Shown: positions 1,642 through 49,626 of the stretch, piece after piece
Layout: each line of letters starts with the position of its first letter
How positions within the stretch are numbered: the first letter of the stretch is position 1
IMG/VR virus record: IMGVR_UViG_3300030102_006934
Coordinates: 316,344-380,343 of that record
Length of the DNA: 64,000 bases
Strand: one strand, 5' to 3'
The notes under the pieces: model-generated
What the model was told of the DNA's origin: nothing
Database searches by the model: none
What the model saw: the letters and a program-made list of their open reading frames with translations, nothing else
Made by a program: the position numbers and the translations under genes

Positions 1642-1713
1642 GGCCCCTTCGTCTAGTGGTTAGGACGCTAGGTTTTCATCCTAGAAACAGGAGTTCGATT
1701 CTCCTAGGGGCTA
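1642..1713 (+). tRNA. tRNA-Glu(TTC)
   Basis: Cloverleaf; anticodon arm CTAGG-TTTTCAT-CCTAG; T-loop TTCGATT. Confidence 0.95.
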
Positions 1714-1804
1714 CTGAGTAGGTTTTCGGTGTAAAACTCTTCGGAGTACCTAATCAAAATCCAGCCATTGTTCAGAATGGGAGATTATGAATAAAAACCG
1801 AAAC

Positions 1805-1878
1805 GGTCTGGTAGTTCAGTTGGTTAGAATACCTGCCTGTCACGCAGGGGGTCGCGAGTTCGAGTCTCGTCCAGACCG
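1805..1878 (+). tRNA. tRNA-Asp(GTC)
   Basis: Cloverleaf; CCTGC-CTGTCAC-GCAGG. Confidence 0.95.
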
Positions 1879-1888
1879 CAAATATTTA

Positions 1889-1973
1889 GGAAGATTGGCA
1901 GAGTGGTCGAATGCACTGGTCTTGAAAACCAGCATACCGAGAGGTATCGAAGGTTCGAATCCTTCATCTTCCG
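1889..1973 (+). tRNA. tRNA-Ser(TGA)
   Basis: CTGGT-CTTGAAA-ACCAG, long variable arm, G73. Confidence 0.95.
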
Positions 1974-1978
1974 CAAAA

Positions 1979-2006
1979 TAAACCCAAATACTCTTTGGGT
2001 TTTTTT
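1979..2006 (+). terminator. Intrinsic terminator
   Basis: AAACCCAAA-tactc-TTTGGGTTT followed by T run. Confidence 0.8.
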
Positions 2007-2030
2007 GTTAACCCAAACTATTTATTGTTG

Positions 2031-2789
2031 ATGAAACTTTTTGAAGTGTACGAAGATATAGTTATTGAAAACTCTTGGGGTAAACTAGAGGAAATACTAC
2101 AATCAGGTTTATTTCAAGAAGAAGGTGACTCTAAATTAAATGAATTACTAGAGAAGTCACAATTGTTAATTTTTAAAGCCTTTGACATAAACCCCAAAGA
2201 GGGTGGTAAATATTTTGTTTCTGGTTCCGCTAGACTATTTAAAAATCCTAGATTATTGAATGTGTTAAACAAACACGATAAATCTTTTGAGTTAGTATTA
2301 GGTGATTTAGATGTGGTAATACCTAATCAAGAAAACTGGGAAACATTATACAAAAACTATACAAATACAAATTCTGAATTTATAAAAGAGTTGTCACAAA
2401 AAATAAGTAAATCACCAGAAGATATTAAAAATAAGTTTTTAGAACAAAAGGGTAATTTTACAAAAGGTATTTATAGACCTGGTGTTGGCGGTATGGAACT
2501 TGTTGATGACGATATGGAAGCTTTTAAAGTTTGGGACCCTAGTAAAGCTAAAGACGCAAAAGACATGTCTGTTAGGAGCCAAAGTGACATTCTAAAAGAC
2601 AGTGTTAATATAGGTGGTTATTTTTTTATGAATATAAAAGATGTATTTGATTATAAATCAAAATTGAGTAGGGAAAAAGAAAAAAACATTGTGGCTTTCT
2701 TAAAAGATTATTTAACAGGAGAAGAGTCCCCACAAAGAGCCGAAGAACTTTTCAATAAAATAGGTGAAGAACTTGGAAAGGATAAATAA
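2031..2789 (+). CDS. Hypothetical protein, possible virion cargo
   Basis: ATG 2031 follows TATTTATT; leader MKLFEVYEDIVIE ends in VIE; DLDV motif hints at a nucleotidyltransferase-like fold. Confidence 0.7.
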   Translation: MKLFEVYEDIVIENSWGKLEEILQSGLFQEEGDSKLNELLEKSQLLIFKAFDINPKEGGKYFVSGSARLFKNPRLLNVLNKHDKSFELVLGDLDVVIPNQENWETLYKNYTNTNSEFIKELSQKISKSPEDIKNKFLEQKGNFTKGIYRPGVGGMELVDDDMEAFKVWDPSKAKDAKDMSVRSQSDILKDSVNIGGYFFMNIKDVFDYKSKLSREKEKNIVAFLKDYLTGEESPQRAEELFNKIGEELGKDK

Positions 2790-2807
2790 TTTAACTATCT
2801 TTACACA

Positions 2808-3095
2808 ATGAAAGGTAAAGAATACTTTAATAGGTTCACGGAAGATGAAAAAGTGGTTTGGTTAAAAAATTTCCACAAGTTTGGTTTTAATGATTTTAAG
2901 TCTTCAGAACAAGTAATGAAAACTGAATTTAAAAACTACTTTCAGTTTTTTTTCGGTATATTCCCAATAGAAAAAACTGAAGAAGGTTATAGTTATTGGT
3001 CAAACCTTTTCCACAAATATAGAGAATACGATAAGTTAACTATTAAAATTGGTCATAATTTTAAGAGTTATGTAACTGAACCAAAAATTTTTTAG
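2808..3095 (+). CDS. Hypothetical protein
   Basis: 95-aa ORF with phage-like codon usage. Confidence 0.65.
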   Translation: MKGKEYFNRFTEDEKVVWLKNFHKFGFNDFKSSEQVMKTEFKNYFQFFFGIFPIEKTEEGYSYWSNLFHKYREYDKLTIKIGHNFKSYVTEPKIF

Positions 3096-3125
3096 AAATA
3101 GGTTGTTATATTAAAAAGTTTTATT

Positions 3126-3150
3126 TATATTTGTATCAGTTCTTTGAAAA
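3126..3150 (+). promoter_or_regulatory. -7 promoter plus boxA-like leader of the tRNA operon
   Basis: TATATTTG then GTTCTTTGAAA; near-identical arrangement precedes tmRNA at 11569-11595. Confidence 0.7.
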
Positions 3151-3153
3151 TAT

Positions 3154-3409
3154 GACCGTGTGGCGGAATTGGTAGACGCTTACAAGAAAAACTAAAACTA
3201 TGGTAAAACTTGGTTTATATGTTTCCCTCTCACCCTTGTGTTGGTGAAAAAACATATAAGTATAATATAATATAATAATAACAACTAAAAGATTACTAAC
3301 GCGTTAGTTGAAACAAATTATAATATGATAAATAATAAAGAAAAATCCAGTTGTTTTAGTTTGATTGTATGAACGAAAGTTCGTGAAGGTTCGAATCCTT
3401 CCATGGTCA
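3154..3409 (+). ncRNA. tRNA-Leu-like RNA with a 179-nt insert replacing the anticodon loop
   Basis: Acceptor GACCGTG/CATGGTC+A73, D-arm GCGGAATTGGTAGACGC, stem TACAA/TTGTA, variable arm GAAC-GAAA-GTTC, T-arm GAAGG-TTCGAAT-CCTTC. Confidence 0.85.
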
Positions 3410-3507
3410 CAATAGGGTGGTAGATAAAATAGTAAAAAATCAATAATGCACCGAAAGGGGGAAATTCAATTTAGCATAAAAATCAATTACAACCACCCAC
3501 AGTTTTA

Positions 3508-3581
3508 GGACTTTTAGCTCAGTTGGTTAGAGCACTTGACTCATAATCAAGGGGTCGTAGGTTCGAGCCCTACATGGTCCA
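3508..3581 (+). tRNA. tRNA(CAT), probably Ile2 (lysidine type); elongator Met not excluded
   Basis: CTTGA-CTCATAA-TCAAG; paired G1-C72, so not an initiator. Confidence 0.9.
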
Positions 3582-3590
3582 CGTTAATTA

Positions 3591-3674
3591 GCTCGGGTGG
3601 CGGAATAGGTAGACGCGTCAGACTTAAAATCTGATTCCCAGTTGGGAGTGAGGGTTCGATTCCCTCTCCGAGTA
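3591..3674 (+). tRNA. tRNA-Leu(TAA)
   Basis: TCAGA-CTTAAAA-TCTGA, long variable arm, A73. Confidence 0.95.
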
Positions 3675-3893
3675 CTAGAGAGAGTGATGGGTACTCTCGG
3701 TGTTAGTAGAGGTCACGAAACTCTACCCCAAAAGCCTACGCGCGGGAAGAGCGAGGTATGTGGATACACGGATGGGTCATCCCCCTACCCCCACATCAAG
3801 GATTGACTTTTTTATGTGGTAAGACACTAATGAGTATTTTGAATAGGAAAAGAACGTTAAAATCTAGTACACTAAACCCTAGTGTACGCATTT

Positions 3894-3967
3894 GGATGGG
3901 TAGCTCAGCTGGATAGAGCATCTGCCTTCTAAGCAGACGGTCGCAGGTTCGAATCCTGCCCCGTTCA
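3894..3967 (+). tRNA. tRNA-Arg(TCT)
   Basis: TCTGC-CTTCTAA-GCAGA. Confidence 0.95.
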
Positions 3968-3972
3968 CTATT

Positions 3973-4000
3973 AAAACCTCGACATTAGTTGGGGTTTTTT
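3973..4000 (+). terminator. Intrinsic terminator
   Basis: AAAACCTCGAC-atta-GTTGGGGTTTT plus T run. Confidence 0.75.
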
Positions 4001-4048
4001 ATTGCCAATTAAAATAGGTTACCTACCTTTGTTCTAAACAAATAAGTT

Positions 4049-4789
4049 ATGTTAAATATATTTGAGGTTGGTGGATGTGTTAGAGATGAAATTCTAGGTG
4101 TAAGTACCAACGACATCGATTTTACTTTTGTTATAGAAGATACCAACCAAACAGTGGATGAGGGTTGGGATCAAATGTTATCTCACCTAAAAGAGGCTGG
4201 GTTTAAAATATTTTTAGAAACAAAAGAATGTTTTACTGTTAGAGCTAAATTCCCCAAAAACCATATTAATGAAGGATTAGTGGCTGACTTTGTTATGGCT
4301 AGGAAAGAAGTTGGTTACATTGATGGTACTAGGAAACCTATTTTAGAACTAGGTACACTGTTAGATGACTTAGTTAGAAGAGATTTTACAATCAATGCTT
4401 TAGCAAAAGATATGGACGGTAATATTATAGACCCCTTCGGTGGTGTAAAACATCTTAAAGAAGGTATCCTAATAACACCTCTAGATTCAAGAAAAACCAT
4501 GATGGACGACCCACTTAGAATATTAAGAGCTTTAAGATTTTCTATCACAAAAGGTTTTGAGGTATCTGAAGACATTATGGAAGCTATGAAGCAACCAAAC
4601 ATTTTAGAGAAATTAAAAACAACAGTTAGCCAAGAAAGAATTAGAGAAGAGTTGACTAAGATGATGAAATTCGATACAATTAAAACAATGAAACTACTAG
4701 TTAATATTGATAACGAGTTTATTCATGGGTTTTTAAATATCATTTTTGAAAAAGACATGTGGTTAAACCCAACTACCAAAAACAAGTAA
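4049..4789 (+). CDS. cca: tRNA nucleotidyltransferase (CCA-adding/poly(A) polymerase class II)
   Basis: VGGCVRD, DIDF, DLVRRDFTINALA, DDPLRILRALRF; TACCTTTG promoter element at 4024-4031. Confidence 0.9.
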   Translation: MLNIFEVGGCVRDEILGVSTNDIDFTFVIEDTNQTVDEGWDQMLSHLKEAGFKIFLETKECFTVRAKFPKNHINEGLVADFVMARKEVGYIDGTRKPILELGTLLDDLVRRDFTINALAKDMDGNIIDPFGGVKHLKEGILITPLDSRKTMMDDPLRILRALRFSITKGFEVSEDIMEAMKQPNILEKLKTTVSQERIREELTKMMKFDTIKTMKLLVNIDNEFIHGFLNIIFEKDMWLNPTTKNK

Positions 4790-4806
4790 ATTAAAAAACA
4801 AAAAAA

Positions 4807-5061
4807 ATGAATTTATTAAATAATATCGTAGATTATTACGAAGAAGAGGAAATATTAAAGGCAGATGGTTTCGATGAGGCGGTTATTGGTATAGAAGAAG
4901 GTACCATGAGATTGATTTATTCAGTTACTAAGTGTATTGAAATACTAATGACTGAAGATGATATGTCTATGGAAGATGCTATGGAACATTTTAGATATAA
5001 TGTTAGTGGTGCTTATGTTGGTAAAAAAACACCTATATGGTCAGAGGATATGTTTTATTAA
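4807..5061 (+). CDS. Conserved phage hypothetical protein
   Basis: LKADGFDEAVIG...YNVSGAYVGKKTP pattern recalled from large phages. Confidence 0.7.
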   Translation: MNLLNNIVDYYEEEEILKADGFDEAVIGIEEGTMRLIYSVTKCIEILMTEDDMSMEDAMEHFRYNVSGAYVGKKTPIWSEDMFY

Positions 5062-5198
5062 CATATTTATATAGTAGTAAAATAACTTTTACATAATTTG
5101 TTTTTTTATATAGAAATAATGTACAATATTTTTGAACCAGAGAACATTCATGACGAGGATGACGAGTTAGATATTTTCTAGTATATTTATTAGAAAAT

Positions 5199-5272
5199 GG
5201 GGGATTAGCTCAGCTGGCTAGAGCACCTGCCTTGCACGCAGGGGGTCATCGGTTCGACTCCGATATCCTCCA
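5199..5272 (+). tRNA. tRNA-Ala(TGC)
   Basis: CCTGC-CTTGCAC-GCAGG; G3-U70 pair. Confidence 0.95.
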
Positions 5273-5335
5273 CAATAAAATTGTTTTTACTCACCACTAT
5301 CACTTATTAACTATCTTACTATATTTATATTCGAT

Positions 5336-30446: not shown

Positions 30447-30782
30447 ATGAAACATTTAATTAGAAAAATACTAAATGAAGGTGATTTTGATTGGGTAGAA
30501 GATTCAAAAAGTCCTAATATACCCTTAAAAGACATATCTGACTGGGTATATGAAACTAGATATAAAATTGCTCCAGTCATGCAAAGTATAGATGAATTCA
30601 AAAAACAAAACTTTATCAAAGGTGGGTCTAATAATTCGAATACCACTAATTCAGAAGTACTAGAAGACGTTTTATATTCTATCACACAAATAGGTACTGA
30701 AATAAGTAATATATATGATAGTCTTGAACAAATAGACGAAGAACTTCACTCATTAAGTTTTGTAATTGAAGATGATGAATAA
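30447..30782 (+). CDS. xE-DFDW family protein
   Basis: MKHLIRKILNEGDFDWV. Confidence 0.8.
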   Translation: MKHLIRKILNEGDFDWVEDSKSPNIPLKDISDWVYETRYKIAPVMQSIDEFKKQNFIKGGSNNSNTTNSEVLEDVLYSITQIGTEISNIYDSLEQIDEELHSLSFVIEDDE

Positions 30783-31473
30783 AAAAGACATATTATTGGA
30801 AATGGGTAGGTACGACTCCTTAACTAGAAGAATAAGTAATGATATTTTTAGTGAGATAAAAAAATCAGAAGGAAAACTAGGTATTACTCGTATAGAACTT
30901 CCTTGGGATACAAAGAAAATTCCGGCATATAATCACGAATCTGGTCTTGTTATAGAAGTAGCTCTAGTAATTAATAGAACTGAGGATACAATACTTTATG
31001 GTAATAGGGAATTACCTTATTATGTGTTTACTTATTTAGCTGATGAGGATTCTATAGTTGTAGAGGTTAGCTTAGACGAATTGTATGGTAAAAGTTTTTA
31101 TGAGGAGATTATCTACAAAATCAATGAAGATGTTAGACACGAAATAGAGCATTTACTACAAGAGATGGGTGTGGGTGACAGAGAGGGTCTAGATTTAAAA
31201 AATTCTTCTAATTATGAAACCACTTTCGACCACCATAAAGATAAAGGTGAAGTAGCGGCCCTAGTACATGGATTTTATCGTAGAGCTAAACTAGAGAAAA
31301 AACCAATAGACGTTATAATGTTAGAGGACTTGAATAAAGATATCTTGGATGGTAGAATAACAGTAGAAGAGGCAGATAAGTTAATACAACTATGGATTAA
31401 GTATTCAATGAATAATCTACCAAAAGCACAGTACACACCAAAAATTAAAAGACGTTTTATTTTCGAAAAGTAA
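30772..31473 (+). CDS. Leader-bearing protein with HExxH zincin-like motif
   Basis: ILLE-MG; RHEIEH followed by a downstream E (GEVAA). Confidence 0.7.
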   Translation: MMNKKDILLEMGRYDSLTRRISNDIFSEIKKSEGKLGITRIELPWDTKKIPAYNHESGLVIEVALVINRTEDTILYGNRELPYYVFTYLADEDSIVVEVSLDELYGKSFYEEIIYKINEDVRHEIEHLLQEMGVGDREGLDLKNSSNYETTFDHHKDKGEVAALVHGFYRRAKLEKKPIDVIMLEDLNKDILDGRITVEEADKLIQLWIKYSMNNLPKAQYTPKIKRRFIFEK

Positions 31474-31549: not shown

Positions 31550-31720
31550 ATGCCAAAATCAAGAAATAGAAAAAATCATAAGAAAAAAGTAGAAGCTAGA
31601 AGAAAAAGAATGGATGCCAAAAAAAGAACTATGGAGAATCAGTTCAGAAAAATGGTTGAGCAAAGAATGAAAGAAATGAATGCTAATAACGATGAAAGTA
31701 AAGAACAAGAAAATGTCTAA
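31550..31720 (+). CDS. Small basic protein; absent from the ORF track
   Basis: MPKSRNRKNHKKKVEARRKR..., 56 aa. Confidence 0.7.
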   Translation: MPKSRNRKNHKKKVEARRKRMDAKKRTMENQFRKMVEQRMKEMNANNDESKEQENV

Positions 31721-32351
31721 TAAAGAAAGTGATGTATTAGTTAGTGATTTAGTTTATGACGGTTATCATAAAATAGAAGAAGTAGTTAGAAACTACGAAG
31801 GTAAAGAAATAAAAACTGAAGTTTTAAAAAAAGGCCAAAATGTATCAGCTGTTGTGTACAATACTGAAAGTAAAGAGTACATTTTTATCGAAAAATACAA
31901 AGTATCTGCTGACGGTGTTACTGTTGAAATAATAAACGGTAACGTTGGTCAAAATGAAAAACCACAACAATCAATAAAAAGGTTGGTTACGGAGTTGACT
32001 GGTTATAAAGTAGAAACAGTAAAAGAAATAACTAACTATTACATGGACACCAATAATTCAGATGAGATTTGTTCTTTATACTATATTGAGGTTAATGAAT
32101 TAGTTGTGGATGATTTGGAGTTTGAGGATTATAAATTAATTAAAGTTGAAAAACTAGGTTTGGGTGGTAAGCTATTTGTAGAAGACCCTATGAACATGAT
32201 GAGTTTTAATACAGAAGAAGATAAAAAAGTAAAACCACCATATCAAACTATTGACGCAAAATCTTTAATAGCTGTTATGTGGGTTGAAAACAACAACATT
32301 TTAAAAGATGTTGCAGAACTTATAACTAACGCTAAAATAAGAAGTTTATGA
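31713..32351 (+). CDS. ADP-ribose pyrophosphatase (NudF)-like protein with a degenerate Nudix box
   Basis: VSAVVYN...IFIEKYK...VEIINGNV..NEKP...KRLVTELTGY. Confidence 0.7.
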   Translation: MSNKESDVLVSDLVYDGYHKIEEVVRNYEGKEIKTEVLKKGQNVSAVVYNTESKEYIFIEKYKVSADGVTVEIINGNVGQNEKPQQSIKRLVTELTGYKVETVKEITNYYMDTNNSDEICSLYYIEVNELVVDDLEFEDYKLIKVEKLGLGGKLFVEDPMNMMSFNTEEDKKVKPPYQTIDAKSLIAVMWVENNNILKDVAELITNAKIRSL

Positions 32352-32554
32352 TGAACGAAAAAATAGTGGATGCTTTAAGGACAAAGTATCAATACGACAT
32401 GAAAAAATCAGTATCTTTAATAGATTCTGAATTAAACAACCCAACCACTGAGACTATAATTAATGTAGACCGTTTAATTGGTGAGTTTTATGAAGCTAAA
32501 GAAAAAGCTTCCTACTTGGAGGCTATCATTAAGAATTTAAAGGGGGAAGAGTAA
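32348..32554 (+). CDS. Hypothetical protein
   Basis: 68 aa, translationally coupled. Confidence 0.7.
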   Translation: MMNEKIVDALRTKYQYDMKKSVSLIDSELNNPTTETIINVDRLIGEFYEAKEKASYLEAIIKNLKGEE

Positions 32555-33219
32555 TGACAAACAATCAAATATTTTTCAATATAGATACACAACAAGACTT
32601 TTTTGATAGGGAGTGTGTAGATATACCAAATGGGGAATCTGTTTTAGAAAATTTAAAATCAATTAGTAATTATTTAAGGGATAACCAAATTAAAACTATC
32701 CATACAATAAGATGGTTCATAGAGGATTCGGAATTCTTTTCTGAGATGCCAGATTATAAAACTAAATTCCCTAAACATTGTATTAAAGATACAAAAGGAT
32801 CTAGATTTATAAGTCAGACAGCACCTATAGGTTATTTTTTGATAAATTGGGAGGGTGGTGACTTAGTATTCCCAGAAATACACAGAAACACAAACATTGT
32901 GGTAACTAAAAAAAATACTGATTTATTTGGTGGTAACTCTTTTTCCGAAGCTTTAATAAATAATCTAGGAATTCCAATGATGCAAAGACCATCTTTTTAT
33001 CTGTACGGTGTTTCAGTTGGTTCCACAGCATTGTCACTATTAAGAAGAGGTTATTCAGTGACGGTCATTAGTGATGCCAATATAAACTTAGATGGACAAG
33101 TATTTAAAAAAGAGGATATAATAAATAGTACTATAAACCCAGAAACTGGTAAACAAGTAAATGAGGTGTTACCATTAAATTTTATAACAACAAAAGAGTT
33201 AATAGATGGAAATAAATAG
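32554..33219 (+). CDS. Isochorismatase/nicotinamidase-fold protein lacking the catalytic Cys
   Basis: NIDTQQDF, FPKHCIKDTKG, TKKNTDLF; YGVSVGSTA where GVATDYCV is expected. Confidence 0.75.
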   Translation: MTNNQIFFNIDTQQDFFDRECVDIPNGESVLENLKSISNYLRDNQIKTIHTIRWFIEDSEFFSEMPDYKTKFPKHCIKDTKGSRFISQTAPIGYFLINWEGGDLVFPEIHRNTNIVVTKKNTDLFGGNSFSEALINNLGIPMMQRPSFYLYGVSVGSTALSLLRRGYSVTVISDANINLDGQVFKKEDIINSTINPETGKQVNEVLPLNFITTKELIDGNK

Positions 33220-33829
33220 TGAATCAATAGAGAGATGGGGTTCGATAGGTTTGTTAGAGGGACTACCTATATGGGAGAAAAATGAGTTAGCCTTAATTTT
33301 AGATAACGCCACAAAAATATTGTTAGACCAAATTAAGAGAAAATCTTTAAGCGATGAATTTTTAGACATTTATGATAATGTGTACATCCCTATTTGTAGA
33401 AGATTATATAGAAGGGTTGGCCCTAGGTTTGACATTATTAAGATGATGGATAGATTGATGGATGATACGATACTTAATTTTGACTTACTTAAAGGGAAAG
33501 TTGAAAACAAAAAAAAGGAAAAACTAAGTCAAAAAGACCCAATAGTAGAGTTCTGTGTTAATTTTTCCGATTCTTACGAGGATGAAGAAACTCTTAAAAG
33601 TTTTTTATCAGAAGAAGATTATGAAAAAAAGGTAGATCTAATTTTAGAAAGAATGCGGTCTGTGTTATTAAATAATAGGAATGTTTTAAGTTTTAAGAAT
33701 ACTGGTACCGATTGGGATATAAAATTATCGGAAGAGAAAAGGTCAGTTAGTCATGTTAGGTTTTGGAATCAAAAAATGTCTAACTCTTTTCTACTACAAT
33801 CTCTATCAGATATAAACAAAGGTATATAA
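33206..33829 (+). CDS. Protein resembling the N-terminus of T4 gp23-type major capsid proteins
   Basis: RWGSIGLLEGL...LALILDNA...IPICRR. Confidence 0.55.
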   Translation: MEINSESIERWGSIGLLEGLPIWEKNELALILDNATKILLDQIKRKSLSDEFLDIYDNVYIPICRRLYRRVGPRFDIIKMMDRLMDDTILNFDLLKGKVENKKKEKLSQKDPIVEFCVNFSDSYEDEETLKSFLSEEDYEKKVDLILERMRSVLLNNRNVLSFKNTGTDWDIKLSEEKRSVSHVRFWNQKMSNSFLLQSLSDINKGI

Positions 33830-34314
33830 TGGAAAAGGCAGAGAGGTTAAAAAATCAAATTTTCTTTGATGATAGGGGTTCATTTAGTCCTCTATCACTT
33901 AATTTATTAGATAAAGTATGGGTTCAAAGTAATGTTAGTGTCAACCCCCAAAAATGGACTCTAAGAGGACTCCATTTCCAAAAGGGTTGGTACTCACAAG
34001 CTAAACTGATAAAAGTTATAAAAGGTGAGATATTGGACTTTGTGGTGGATTTAAGAGGCGATACCCCATCCAAAGTTGAGTTTTTTCAAATGTCTGAGGG
34101 TGATGAAATAATTGTCCCTAAAGGTTACGCCCATGGGTTTATCACTTTAGAAGATAATACTGTAGTACAATATTTAGTGGATAATGAGTACAACCCAAGT
34201 TCAGAAGGTAATATAGTGTGGACCAATTTCGAATCTATTTTGAATAAAATAAAAGAGGTTTCCCCAGAATTTGATGATTCTAAAGTGATAATTTCAAAAA
34301 AAGATTTAATTTAA
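33829..34314 (+). CDS. rmlC: dTDP-4-dehydrorhamnose 3,5-epimerase
   Basis: FFDDRGSF, TLRGLHFQ, QAKLIKV, VPKGYAHGF. Confidence 0.9.
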   Translation: MEKAERLKNQIFFDDRGSFSPLSLNLLDKVWVQSNVSVNPQKWTLRGLHFQKGWYSQAKLIKVIKGEILDFVVDLRGDTPSKVEFFQMSEGDEIIVPKGYAHGFITLEDNTVVQYLVDNEYNPSSEGNIVWTNFESILNKIKEVSPEFDDSKVIISKKDLI

Positions 34315-34609: not shown

Positions 34610-34681
34610 GCGGATGTAGTTTAATGGTAAAACGTTTAACATCCAGTTAGAAGTTAGGAGTTCGATTCTCACTCATCCGCT
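34610..34681 (+). tRNA. Atypical tRNA-Gly(TCC)
   Basis: GCGGATG/CATCCGC, U73; loop CATCCAG (A33); bulged A in T-stem. Confidence 0.85.
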
Positions 34682-34846
34682 CAATTTAAAAAAAGATTAA
34701 CTCAATTAAAATGAGGAAAAAACATCTAACCAAAAAATACGCTAAGTTAATATCCTTTAGACTTTTAGCCACTGTAAAACATGTGGACTATGAGTGGTTG
34801 GAAAAAGTCCTTTCGGATTTAATAGACGCTTCAAATAAAAAGTAGT

Positions 34847-48966: not shown

Positions 48967-49626
48967 ATGGGAAAAAATAATAATAAAGCAAACGATGCTT
49001 GGCAAGTATTAAGAATTCAAGGAGAATTTGTAAAAGGTTTCGACCAATTATCAGAGTTAGGTCCTTGTATATCCATATTTGGTTCAGCTAGAACTAAGAA
49101 AGATAACAAATATTATAATAATGCAAAAGAACTTGCTGACTTATGTACTAAAAATGGTTTTGGTGTGATAACTGGTGGTGGTCCTGGAATTATGGAAGCG
49201 GCAAATAAAGGAGCTTATAAGTCAGACAAACCAAGTGTTGGTTTATCAATACAACTACCTTTTGAGGCCAAAGAAAACGATTATATAGATAATTTAGTGG
49301 AATGTAGGTATTTTTTTACTAGAAAAGTTTTCTTCTTAAAATACGCACAAGCATTTGTTGGATATCCGGGTGGGTTTGGGACTTTAGATGAGTTATTTGA
49401 AACCCTAACACTTATTCAATGTGGTCACATGAGAAAAGTACCAGTAGTTCTTGTCGGTGTAAGTTATTGGAGACCACTTATATATTGGTTAAGAGATACA
49501 ATGTATAAGGAGGAGGGTAATATTTCTGAAAAGGACTTCGATTTATTTACAATAGTAGATACCCCACAAGAAGCTATGGAATACATTTTACAAAAACGAA
49601 AACATCAAACAGATATTAATTTTTAA
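48967..49626 (+). CDS. LOG-family nucleotide monophosphate nucleosidase
   Basis: SIFGSAR, ITGGGPGIMEAAN, PGGFGTLDE. Confidence 0.9.
   Translation: MGKNNNKANDAWQVLRIQGEFVKGFDQLSELGPCISIFGSARTKKDNKYYNNAKELADLCTKNGFGVITGGGPGIMEAANKGAYKSDKPSVGLSIQLPFEAKENDYIDNLVECRYFFTRKVFFLKYAQAFVGYPGGFGTLDELFETLTLIQCGHMRKVPVVLVGVSYWRPLIYWLRDTMYKEEGNISEKDFDLFTIVDTPQEAMEYILQKRKHQTDINF

What the first reader, a model, noticed from the sequence alone, without database searches (positions are those of the whole stretch)
31713..33219. Neighbouring NudF-like and nicotinamidase-like genes that have both lost catalytic residues
Seen: the Nudix box GX5EX7REUXEEXG appears as GNVGQNEKPQQSIKRLVTELTG (RE and EE eroded). The PncA-fold protein keeps the N-terminal Asp, PxHC and Lys but has RWF for the metal-binding DWH and lacks the nucleophile Cys segment. 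Established: the parent enzymes act on ADP-ribose and nicotinamide, the products of NAD+-cleaving defences (Thoeris, SIR2/DSR, TIR); phages counter these with NAD-rebuilding pathways and signal-binding sponges. Inference: paired pseudo-enzymes that bind ADPR- or nicotinamide-type molecules or immune signals, or have shifted chemistry.
Basis: partly seen in the sequence, partly recalled or inferred. Interest (0 to 1): 0.62.

Follow-up and report, generated by a model that had tools for sequence, protein, structure and literature searches.

The report
Dead nicotinamidase and Nudix pair in phage
A giant T4-like phage carries two tightly linked genes, descended from an NAD-recycling enzyme pair, that have lost their catalytic residues yet are strongly conserved, so they now probably act by binding something, though what they bind is untested.

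Summary
Window 31713-32351 encodes a NudF/NudK-type Nudix protein whose box reads RLVTEL instead of REUXEE. Window 32554-33219 encodes a PncA-fold protein that keeps Asp11, PxHC and Lys119. It has RWF for DWH and lacks the Cys and oxyanion loop.

Neither gene is decaying. Both have many intact metagenomic relatives, with dN/dS of at most 0.06-0.08 to the closest one. They sit in a conserved, translationally coupled block in a 380-kb T4-like phage.

The two losses are separate events:
- **PncA-like loss:** one old origin. The nearest catalytic relatives lie beside PncB and NadE in Preiss-Handler NAD clusters.
- **Nudix loss:** younger. It arose once, on a long stem branch, inside a clade that is otherwise canonical and ADPRase-like. 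Most relatives therefore pair a live Nudix with the dead PncA.

This genome has no PncB/NAMPT, NadE or Macro gene.

Best reading: an exapted remnant of a phage NAD/ADP-ribose module that now works without the ancestral hydrolysis. Ligand binding or an anti-defence role remains inference. The canonical nicotinamide- and ADPR-contact motifs are also altered, so the ligands may have changed.

The parts
31713..32351 (+). Nudix-like protein (212 aa), NudF/NudK (YffH/AdpP) two-domain fold. Box reads KRLVTELTG, DTN replaces SPG, and the catalytic loop is shortened.
   Evidence: TIGR00052 scores 40.7 against a cut-off of 79.55, while the canonical sister protein in L003 scores 85.7.
32554..33219 (+). 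PncA/isochorismatase-fold protein (221 aa). It lacks the nucleophile Cys, the oxyanion loop and the Asp/His metal ligands. It keeps Asp11, His75-Cys76 and Lys119, and has gained a conserved NLGxPxMxRP segment.
32348..32554 (+). 68-aa predicted helical ORF between the two genes. It overlaps both neighbours (ATGA and TAATG junctions). It is present in the inner family only and absent in L029, L030, L032 and L036.
31550..31720 (+). 56-aa highly basic protein whose end overlaps the Nudix start. It is conserved upstream of the Nudix in most relatives checked (not found in L030), including the distant L032.
33206..33829 (+). 207-aa protein of unknown function that overlaps the iso-like gene by 14 bp. 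It is conserved downstream in all seven aligned relatives and in L032 (202 aa).
   Evidence: No family or structure match was found.
30766..31473 (+). 235-aa protein with an invariant HE[IL]EH motif. It is the first gene of the conserved block and is separated from the p56 gene by a 76-bp AT-rich gap.
   Evidence: No family match was found.
33829..34314 (+). RmlC-like cupin (dTDP-4-dehydrorhamnose 3,5-epimerase family), the last translationally coupled gene of the run. It is adjacent in L026 and lies about 3 kb away in L032.

Best explanation
The two genes are a vertically inherited, translationally coupled remnant of a jumbo-phage NAD+/ADP-ribose module, originally a nicotinamidase (PncA) plus a NudF-type ADP-ribose pyrophosphatase.

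The PncA descendant lost its Cys nucleophile, oxyanion loop and metal ligands once, early, in a large clade of aquatic T4-like phages. It has been kept ever since directly downstream of the Nudix gene.

In the window's sub-lineage the Nudix protein later lost two box glutamates, and in most of that clade, the window included, also the ADPRase Pro-Gly motif and the catalytic loop. This happened in a single burst of change, after which new residues became fixed.

Both proteins therefore no longer carry out the ancestral hydrolysis. They most likely act by binding a small molecule related to NAD breakdown or signalling, or a protein partner, within the phage-host contest over NAD.

Shown: ancestry, the order and single origin of the losses, purifying selection and the operon structure.
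Inferred: non-catalytic binding, the nature of the ligand, and any anti-defence role.
For: 1. The folds and the missing residues are confirmed.
2. Equivalent substitutions kill the model enzymes. NUDT9 with RILGEE or REFGKK is inactive, and human TRPM2 NUDT9-H (RILRQE) binds ADPR without hydrolysing it (PMC6461439). PncA C138A, D49G, H51A, H57D and A134V lose activity (PMC3025910).
3. The block p235-p56-Nudix-(p68)-iso-p207 is syntenic in 7 related loci at 41-85% amino-acid identity. The Nudix-iso adjacency persists in the distant L032 and L036. Gene junctions overlap by 1-14 bp.
4. Purifying selection is strong. Window versus L026 gives dN/dS of 0.08 (Nudix) and 0.06 (iso). dS is saturated, so these are upper bounds. 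No relative has a frameshift.
5. Eroded iso proteins form one group with 98% SH-aLRT support.
6. The eroded Nudix proteins form one clade with 100% support, on the longest inner branch (0.77 substitutions per site), nested among canonical proteins. New states are fixed in most or nearly all of the 27 full-length clade members: T70, T93, T113, N114, D134, F137, Y140.
7. All three canonical iso relatives examined lie beside NAPRTase and NAD synthase.
8. The 380-kb genome, which CheckV rates complete, has no NAPRTase/NAMPT, NAD synthase or Macro gene. A working nicotinamidase would therefore have no pathway to feed.
Against: - No binding or activity data exist.
- The features that hold nicotinamide in PncA (metal-bound water, oxyanion hole) are gone. 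In the Nudix, Arg35, the Pro-Gly motif and the loop are replaced. The ancestral ligands may no longer fit.
- Across the whole eroded iso clade the replacement residues at the former metal site vary (R/G/S at 53, F/Y/N at 55), and Asp11 is Asn in some members. This argues against one deeply conserved pocket.
- Residues such as Lys119, Cys76, Glu72, Glu82 and Glu94, plus new acidic residues at 134 and 136, could support a different chemistry.
- The co-folding test of the two proteins gave no answer.
- The nearby RmlC-like cupin hints at nucleotide-sugar metabolism instead.
Confidence: 0.42

Rival explanations
1. Shifted chemistry: one or both proteins are still enzymes that use a different residue set and substrate. 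The iso-like protein could be an Asp/Lys-based hydrolase, like the Cys-less isochorismatases PhzD and EntB (from my own knowledge). The Nudix-like protein could use Glu72/Glu82/Glu94 together with the new Asp134 and Glu/Asp136.
For: - Lys119 and Cys76 are invariant and Asp11 is usually kept.
- The iso clade has new invariant residues: Arg145-Pro146 and Tyr167.
- The eroded Nudix clade has fixed new acidic and aromatic residues in the former catalytic loop.
- Strong purifying selection fits an enzyme as well as a binder.
Against: - Asp11 is Asn in L029, L030, P0039 and P0126, so no general acid is conserved across the clade.
- The residue at the Cys position varies (S/D/E/N/Q).
- Both main Mg-binding glutamates of the Nudix box are replaced by aliphatic or variable residues.
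- Sequence affinity is to PncA and not to isochorismatases.
Confidence: 0.25
2. Protein-binding or structural role: the conserved folds serve as scaffolds, regulatory subunits, or decoys and inhibitors of host proteins, such as host NAD-salvage enzymes or NAD-consuming defence effectors. The old pockets would be irrelevant.
For: - The old pocket residues are not uniformly conserved across the eroded iso clade, whereas a new surface-type segment (NLGxPxMxRP) is invariant.
- Erosion in the Nudix is progressive. The deepest member, L039, lost the box glutamates but keeps Ser-Pro. This looks like relaxation of the substrate site after catalysis was lost.
- Tight translational coupling with small conserved partners p56, p68 and p207.
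Against: - The iso loop 57-82, the former metal flap, is highly conserved in sequence, which suggests it is still used.
- No predicted Nudix-iso interface was found, although that test gave no verdict either way.
- No partner has been identified.
Confidence: 0.2
3. Nucleotide-sugar metabolism: the Nudix is a NudK-like NDP-sugar hydrolase lineage that works with the adjacent RmlC-like cupin (and a phosphomannomutase elsewhere in the window) on sugar nucleotides for DNA or surface modification. There would be no link to NAD.
For: - The best PDB match is the GDP-mannose hydrolase NudK.
- An RmlC-like gene is translationally coupled at 33829 and recurs in L026 and L032.
- A PMM family member is present in the window.
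Against: - The iso partner descends from PncA proteins found in PncB/NadE clusters.
- Canonical sister Nudix proteins carry the Pro about 15-16 residues after the box, which marks ADPRases (my own knowledge; the motif is seen).
- RmlC is absent from the block in L003, L006, L028, L029 and L030.
- The window's Nudix lacks its catalytic glutamates whatever the substrate.
Confidence: 0.08
4. Decay: the two genes are non-functional relics on their way to being lost.
For: Catalytic residues are lost in both. The partner NAD genes are absent from the genome.
Against: - ORFs are intact in all 39 and 84 relatives at 90% clustering. Some occur on dozens of contigs, including Tara Oceans samples.
- dN/dS is at most 0.06-0.23 within the eroded clade, the same range as in canonical clades.
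- Synteny is conserved.
- The iso-like protein is the best conserved of the block's proteins in nearly every comparison, and the Nudix-like protein ranks near the top.
Confidence: 0.02

Closest known systems
Nicotinamidase/pyrazinamidase PncA (Mtb 3pl1; P. horikoshii 1ilw/1im5)
   Same: Isochorismatase-like fold. Keeps the equivalents of Asp8, Lys96 and the PxHC His71-Cys72. These are the best sequence matches in the PDB.
   Different: No Cys138 and no cis-peptide/oxyanion loop (4-residue deletion). Asp49, His51 and His57 are replaced by Arg, Phe and Phe, and the Glu conserved in phage relatives is replaced by Phe61. The flap region is modelled with low confidence. No PncB or NadE partner exists in the genome.
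Jumbo-phage Preiss-Handler / NAD-reconstitution gene clusters (pncA, pncB, nadD, nadE; NARP pathways)
   Same: The nearest catalytic relatives of the iso-like protein sit in such clusters, and one of them also holds a NudF-type Nudix and a Macro gene. Clusters of this kind are described for jumbo phages (PMC11662467).
   Different: Only the PncA- and Nudix-derived genes remain here, and both lack catalytic residues. No phosphoribosyltransferase, NAD synthase or Macro gene is present. The one cytidylyltransferase-like gene sits among sugar-metabolism genes.
YffH/AdpP subfamily Nudix enzymes (E. coli NudF ADPRase, NudK GDP-mannose hydrolase; TIGR00052)
   Same: Same architecture of an N-terminal beta domain plus a Nudix domain, and the same length. 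Top structural matches. Sister phage proteins pass the TIGR00052 cut-off.
   Different: The box reads RLVTEL. The Pro-Gly after the box is replaced by Thr-Asn. The GGGxxDE loop is shortened and its Asp is replaced by Phe. Arg35 is replaced by Gly or Thr. The protein scores 40.7 against a cut-off of 79.55.
Non-catalytic Nudix domains: human TRPM2 NUDT9-H (RILRQE) and NrtR regulators
   Same: The first box Glu is replaced by an aliphatic residue. These are precedents for a dead ADPRase kept as a ligand-binding module (PMC6461439; PMC2330246).
   Different: The window protein is stand-alone, with no channel or winged-helix domain. Its ADPR-contact motifs are also altered, so ADPR binding cannot be assumed.
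Phage immune-signal sponges (Tad1, Tad2, Acb2 and related)
   Same: Only the concept: small, non-enzymatic phage proteins that neutralise NAD-derived signals (papers listed).
   Different: The folds are unrelated. No isochorismatase-fold or Nudix-fold sponge turned up in the literature searches. No binding evidence exists here.
Cys-less active members of the fold (isochorismatases PhzD/EntB; from my own knowledge)
   Same: Asp and Lys are present, with a small residue in place of the Cys.
   Different: Sequence affinity is to PncA. Asp11 is not invariant in the clade.

Membership tests
Nudix hydrolase superfamily (PF00293) | Nudix alpha/beta/alpha fold | tested here: met
   AF2 model pLDDT 86.5. 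Foldseek gives 3o52, 1viu, 5c7q and 9b21 at E 3e-13 to 1e-11.
Nudix hydrolase superfamily (PF00293) | Nudix box GX5EX7REUXEEXGU with three metal-binding/catalytic glutamates | tested here: not met
   The box reads G..E..KRLVTELTG. The first and third Glu are Leu, and this state is conserved as L/V/I and variable in 27 clade members.
Nudix hydrolase superfamily (PF00293) | Pfam gathering score | tested here: inconclusive
   20.4 bits against 21.1 in the protein scan, and 21.4 bits in the six-frame search.
YffH/AdpP (NudF/NudK) nucleoside diphosphatase subfamily, TIGR00052 | Curated score cut-off | tested here: not met
   40.7 against 79.55. Canonical sister L003 scores 85.7 and the L031 Nudix 104.5.
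YffH/AdpP (NudF/NudK) nucleoside diphosphatase subfamily, TIGR00052 | Pro about 15-16 residues after the box (ADPRase marker, from my own knowledge) and an acidic catalytic loop (GGGxxDE) | tested here: not met
   Thr113-Asn114 replace Pro-Gly. The loop is 2 residues shorter, with Phe137 in place of Asp. The sister clade keeps both features.
Nicotinamidase PncA / cysteine hydrolases of the isochorismatase fold (PF00857) | Fold and Pfam gathering score | tested here: met
   41.2 bits against 27. Foldseek gives 3hb7, 3o90 and 1ilw.
Nicotinamidase PncA / cysteine hydrolases of the isochorismatase fold (PF00857) | Asp-Lys-Cys catalytic triad with cis-peptide oxyanion loop | tested here: not met
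   Asp11 and Lys119 are present. The Cys and the preceding 'tnv' loop are deleted. Position 154 is S/D/E/N/Q. The residue roles come from PMC3025910.
Nicotinamidase PncA / cysteine hydrolases of the isochorismatase fold (PF00857) | Metal site Asp-x-His plus the His of PxHC | tested here: not met
   Arg53-Trp-Phe55 replace Asp-Trp-His. Only His75 is kept. Canonical relatives have Asp and His in 50 of 50 sequences.
Phage NAD+ salvage / reconstitution pathway (Preiss-Handler cluster, NARP2-like) | Co-occurrence with a phosphoribosyltransferase (PncB/NAMPT), NMNAT and NAD synthase | tested here: not met
   The 380-kb genome has no NAPRTase or NAD_synthase hit, and none occurs in five related fragments. 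Canonical relatives do have them.
Non-catalytic ADPR-binding Nudix modules (TRPM2 NUDT9-H, NrtR) | Degenerate box together with retained ADPR binding | not testable with these tools
   The degenerate box is met. Binding needs ITC/DSF or a structure.
Phage signal sponges (Tad/Acb type) | Sequestration of cADPR-type or cyclic-nucleotide signals and rescue from Thoeris/CBASS | not testable with these tools
   No fold relationship was seen, since all structural matches are hydrolases. The function needs an experiment.

The most novel reading that the evidence does not exclude
The dead nicotinamidase and the dead ADPRase form a new kind of phage counter-defence: a two-protein trap or sensor built from former NAD-salvage enzymes. 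It would sequester NAD-derived immune signals (gcADPR isomers, His-ADPR, N7-cADPR) or NAD fragments, or it would block host NADase effectors. It would be widespread in T4-like jumbo phages of aquatic, probably Bacteroidota, hosts.
Probability: 0.12. Interest if true: 0.8.

Novelty: new variant of a known kind. Interest (0 to 1): 0.55.

Why it matters
- **Annotation:** pipelines name these proteins 'ADP-ribose pyrophosphatase' and 'nicotinamidase-related amidase' (source names). Virome surveys would then count them as NAD-metabolism auxiliary genes, yet the catalytic machinery is absent and the pathway partners are missing.
- **Evolution:** the locus gives a dated, stepwise example of a viral metabolic module turned into non-catalytic proteins. 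The dead PncA came first and the dead Nudix later. Living sister forms are available as natural controls.
- **Possible new function:** if the proteins bind NAD-derived molecules or host NADases, they would add new folds to the phage anti-defence repertoire.
- **Testability:** simple comparative experiments would settle it, using the canonical versus the eroded Nudix on the same genomic background.

Tried and rejected
- **Decay or pseudogene:** rejected on intact ORFs, dN/dS and synteny.
- **Working NAD-salvage step:** rejected for this genome. It has no NAPRTase/NAMPT, NAD synthase or Macro gene. The only cytidylyltransferase-like gene lies among glycosyltransferase and cupin genes.
- **Nudix + iso co-folding:** no answer (score 0.01). 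This counts neither for nor against binding.
- **tblastn of both proteins against 50,697 GenBank phage records:** no match. A blastn of the region matched only a tRNA-Gly.
- **BFVD fold search:** only weak hits to giant-virus nicotinamidases.
- **Atlas feature search:** only generic cysteine-hydrolase clusters for the iso-like protein and nothing for p207.
- **PDB, Pfam, PHROG and NCBIfam searches of p235 and p207; Pfam of p56:** nothing useful.
- **T4 late-promoter motif and sigma-70/terminator scans:** at chance level, so transcription timing is not resolved.
- **Ser154 as a substitute nucleophile:** considered and rejected, because the position varies (S/D/E/N/Q) among relatives.
- **Model coordinates:** not available to scripts, so no pocket geometry was computed.
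Full report
**What is there**

The window is the last 64 kb of a 380,343-bp IMG/VR virus record that CheckV rates complete. GC content is about 30% and almost all genes are on the + strand. The genome encodes a T4-type gp23 major capsid protein (E 1e-62) and many tRNAs, so it is a T4-like jumbo phage. A Por_Secre_tail domain and SprB repeats hint at a Bacteroidota host.

The flagged interval holds two ORFs: 31713-32351 (212 aa) and 32554-33219 (221 aa). A 68-aa ORF separates them.

**The Nudix-like protein**

It matches Pfam NUDIX only at the border: 20.4 bits against 21.1, and 21.4 bits. It aligns to E. coli NudK and to ADP-ribose pyrophosphatases (E about 1e-6).

An AF2 model (pLDDT 86.5) superposes on NudK, NudF and other NDP-sugar/ADPR hydrolases at E 3e-13 to 1e-11. 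The fold claim therefore holds.

The box reads G-x5-E-x7-R-L-V-T-E-L-T-G. The Arg and the middle Glu are kept, and the first and last Glu are Leu. Mutating these positions inactivates NUDT9. Human TRPM2 NUDT9-H, whose box is RILRQE, binds ADPR but does not hydrolyse it (PMC6461439).

**Relatives of the Nudix-like protein**

84 clusters were found. They split cleanly into two groups:
- Sequences at 53% identity or more to the window all carry KR[LVI]VTE[x]TG.
- Those at 40-51% identity carry the canonical KREIMEETG.

On a tree the eroded proteins form one clade with 100% SH-aLRT support. The clade is nested among canonical ones, on the longest internal branch (0.77 substitutions per site).

That branch also carries these changes: R35 to G, M70T, M93T, P113T, G114N (loss of the SPG motif), a 2-residue deletion, and D-to-F and I-to-Y changes in the GGGxxDE loop. 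The new states are fixed in most or nearly all of the 27 full-length clade members.

The deepest eroded member, a Tara contig (L039), has lost the box glutamates but still has Ser-Pro. Catalysis therefore went first.

TIGR00052 (YffH/AdpP) scores 40.7 for the window protein and 85.7 for a canonical sister, against a cut-off of 79.55.

**The PncA-like protein**

It passes PF00857 (41.2 bits). It aligns to M. tuberculosis, P. horikoshii and another nicotinamidase. The model (pLDDT 73) matches isochorismatase-like hydrolases and nicotinamidases.

Using the Mtb numbering (residue roles from PMC3025910):
- Asp8 is kept as Asp11, Lys96 as Lys119, and His71-Cys72 as His75-Cys76.
- Asp49 is replaced by Arg53, His51 by Phe55 and His57 by Phe62.
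- The segment carrying the cis-peptide/oxyanion loop and Cys138 is shortened by four residues.
- The residue at the Cys position is Ser here, and D/E/N/Q in relatives.

The former metal-locked flap (residues 57-82) is the low-confidence part of the model, yet its sequence is highly conserved.

**Relatives of the PncA-like protein**

All 39 close relatives share these states. A profile search of 1.8 billion representatives found 815 relatives. The top six (E 1e-64 to 1e-38) are also eroded. From E 4e-37 downward the hits show the full nicotinamidase signature: D, DWH, PxHC, K and GVAtnvCV.

The eroded sequences form one group with 98% support. In some branches Asp11 is Asn (L029, L030, P0039, P0126).

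**Ancestry**

All three canonical relatives whose contigs were read lie beside NAPRTase (PncB) and NAD synthase. One contig also holds Macro, a NudF-type Nudix and an NMNAT-like gene. Preiss-Handler clusters of this kind are known from jumbo phages (PMC11662467).

Distant eroded members lie directly after a canonical NudF-type Nudix (L032, L036). One lies before a short NAD-synthase-like PP-loop protein (L035).

The window's genome has no NAPRTase/NAMPT, NAD synthase or Macro gene. It has a second, canonical MutT-like Nudix at 73.9 kb. Its one cytidylyltransferase-like gene sits in a sugar-metabolism context.

**Context and selection**

The block p235 - p56 - Nudix - (p68) - iso - p207 is syntenic in seven related loci at 41-85% identity. 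From p56 to the RmlC-like gene, every junction overlaps by 1-14 bp. This indicates one translationally coupled unit.

The Nudix state follows the iso phylogeny:
- Four of four genomes in the window's iso sub-clade have the eroded Nudix (window, L026, L006, L039).
- Seven of seven outside that sub-clade have the canonical one (L003, L028, L029, L030, L032, L036, L040).

Nei-Gojobori dN/dS between the window and L026 is 0.08 for the Nudix and 0.06 for the iso protein. Within-clade values (0.06-0.23) resemble those of the canonical clades. dS is saturated, so these are upper bounds. Decay is excluded.

**Interpretation**

Shown:
- The pair is a conserved, co-expressed module that descends from a phage NAD/ADP-ribose gene set.
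- The PncA descendant lost its hydrolytic machinery once, long ago.
- The Nudix lost its machinery later, and only in this sub-lineage, in a burst followed by renewed constraint.

Inferred:
- Both now act without the ancestral hydrolysis, most likely by binding a small molecule or a protein.
- They probably still act within the NAD-centred phage-host conflict.

I give about 0.85 to 'selected non-hydrolases of NAD-module ancestry'. I give about 0.42 to the fuller statement that includes a binding mechanism.

There are cautions. The elements that hold nicotinamide (metal-bound water, oxyanion hole) and the ADPRase marker residues are themselves replaced. The replacement residues vary across the deep iso clade. 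The ancestral ligands may therefore not be the present ones.

Rival readings are a new chemistry (0.25), a protein-binding or scaffold role (0.2), nucleotide-sugar metabolism with the RmlC-like neighbour (0.08) and decay (0.02). A co-folding test of the two proteins gave no verdict.

**Novelty**

Dead Nudix domains used as ADPR sensors are known (TRPM2 NUDT9-H, NrtR). Phage PncA genes are also known.

Three literature searches found no description of a Cys-less, metal-less PncA lineage, or of its pairing with a Nudix. No relative exists among 50,697 GenBank phage records.

I rate it a new variant of known kinds, worth a small set of comparative biochemical tests.

**Limits**

No pocket geometry was computed, because model coordinates are not exposed. 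Relatives are metagenomic fragments, so absence of NAD genes in them is weak evidence.

Noticed in passing
window 30766-31473 (+): A 235-aa protein at the head of the conserved block has an invariant HE[IL]EH motif followed by a conserved HH..D..E..ALV.GFYR segment in all 7 relatives. It may be an unrecognised zinc metallohydrolase. No Pfam, PHROG, NCBIfam or PDB match.
   Followed up: partly
window 31550-31720 (+); L032 713-877: A 54-61-aa extremely basic protein (N-terminus like PKSRNRKNHKKK) is conserved immediately upstream of the Nudix gene, even in the distant relative L032. Its end overlaps the Nudix start codon.
   Followed up: partly
window 48967-49623 (+) (G000 365535-365930): A LOG/SLOG-family protein (PF03641, E 7e-34, and LDcluster4). 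SLOG domains are predicted nucleotide/ADPr-derivative binders or processors in phage-host conflict. It lies about 16 kb downstream of the pair.
   Followed up: partly
window-wide; L013 9589-14052: A Por_Secre_tail (T9SS sorting) domain in one window ORF and SprB repeats in a 1488-aa protein suggest a Bacteroidota (Flavobacteriia-like) host. The 30% GC content fits this.
   Followed up: no
window 1642-5273 and 34610-34682: Eight tRNA genes (Glu, Asp, Ser, Met, Leu, Arg, Ala, Gly). The Gly tRNA sits just after the RmlC-like gene and was the only part of the region with a blastn match to known phages.
   Followed up: no
L035 813-1502: In one distant lineage the eroded PncA-like gene is followed by a short (229-aa) protein that matches only the PP-loop start of NAD synthase (28.7 bits). 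This may be another cut-down NAD-pathway relic.
   Followed up: partly
P0185 and P0038: P0185 looks like an intermediate. The loop is full length, but the Cys position is Asn and the metal Asp is Leu, and it sits as sister to the eroded iso group. P0038 is a p68-iso fusion or frameshifted call on one ENA contig, truncated after about residue 105 of iso.
   Followed up: no
window, various: Other auxiliary genes in the window: thymidine kinase, phosphomannomutase, CCA-adding/poly(A) polymerase head with HD domain, GH16 glycosidase, PrsW-like and M43-like peptidases, a thioesterase, PAP2, and two HNH endonucleases.
   Followed up: no
G000 73890-74330 (L001): A second, small (146-aa) Nudix protein with a fully canonical box (GGIDEGEE..REIGEE). 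The phage therefore keeps at least one presumably active Nudix hydrolase elsewhere.
   Followed up: partly
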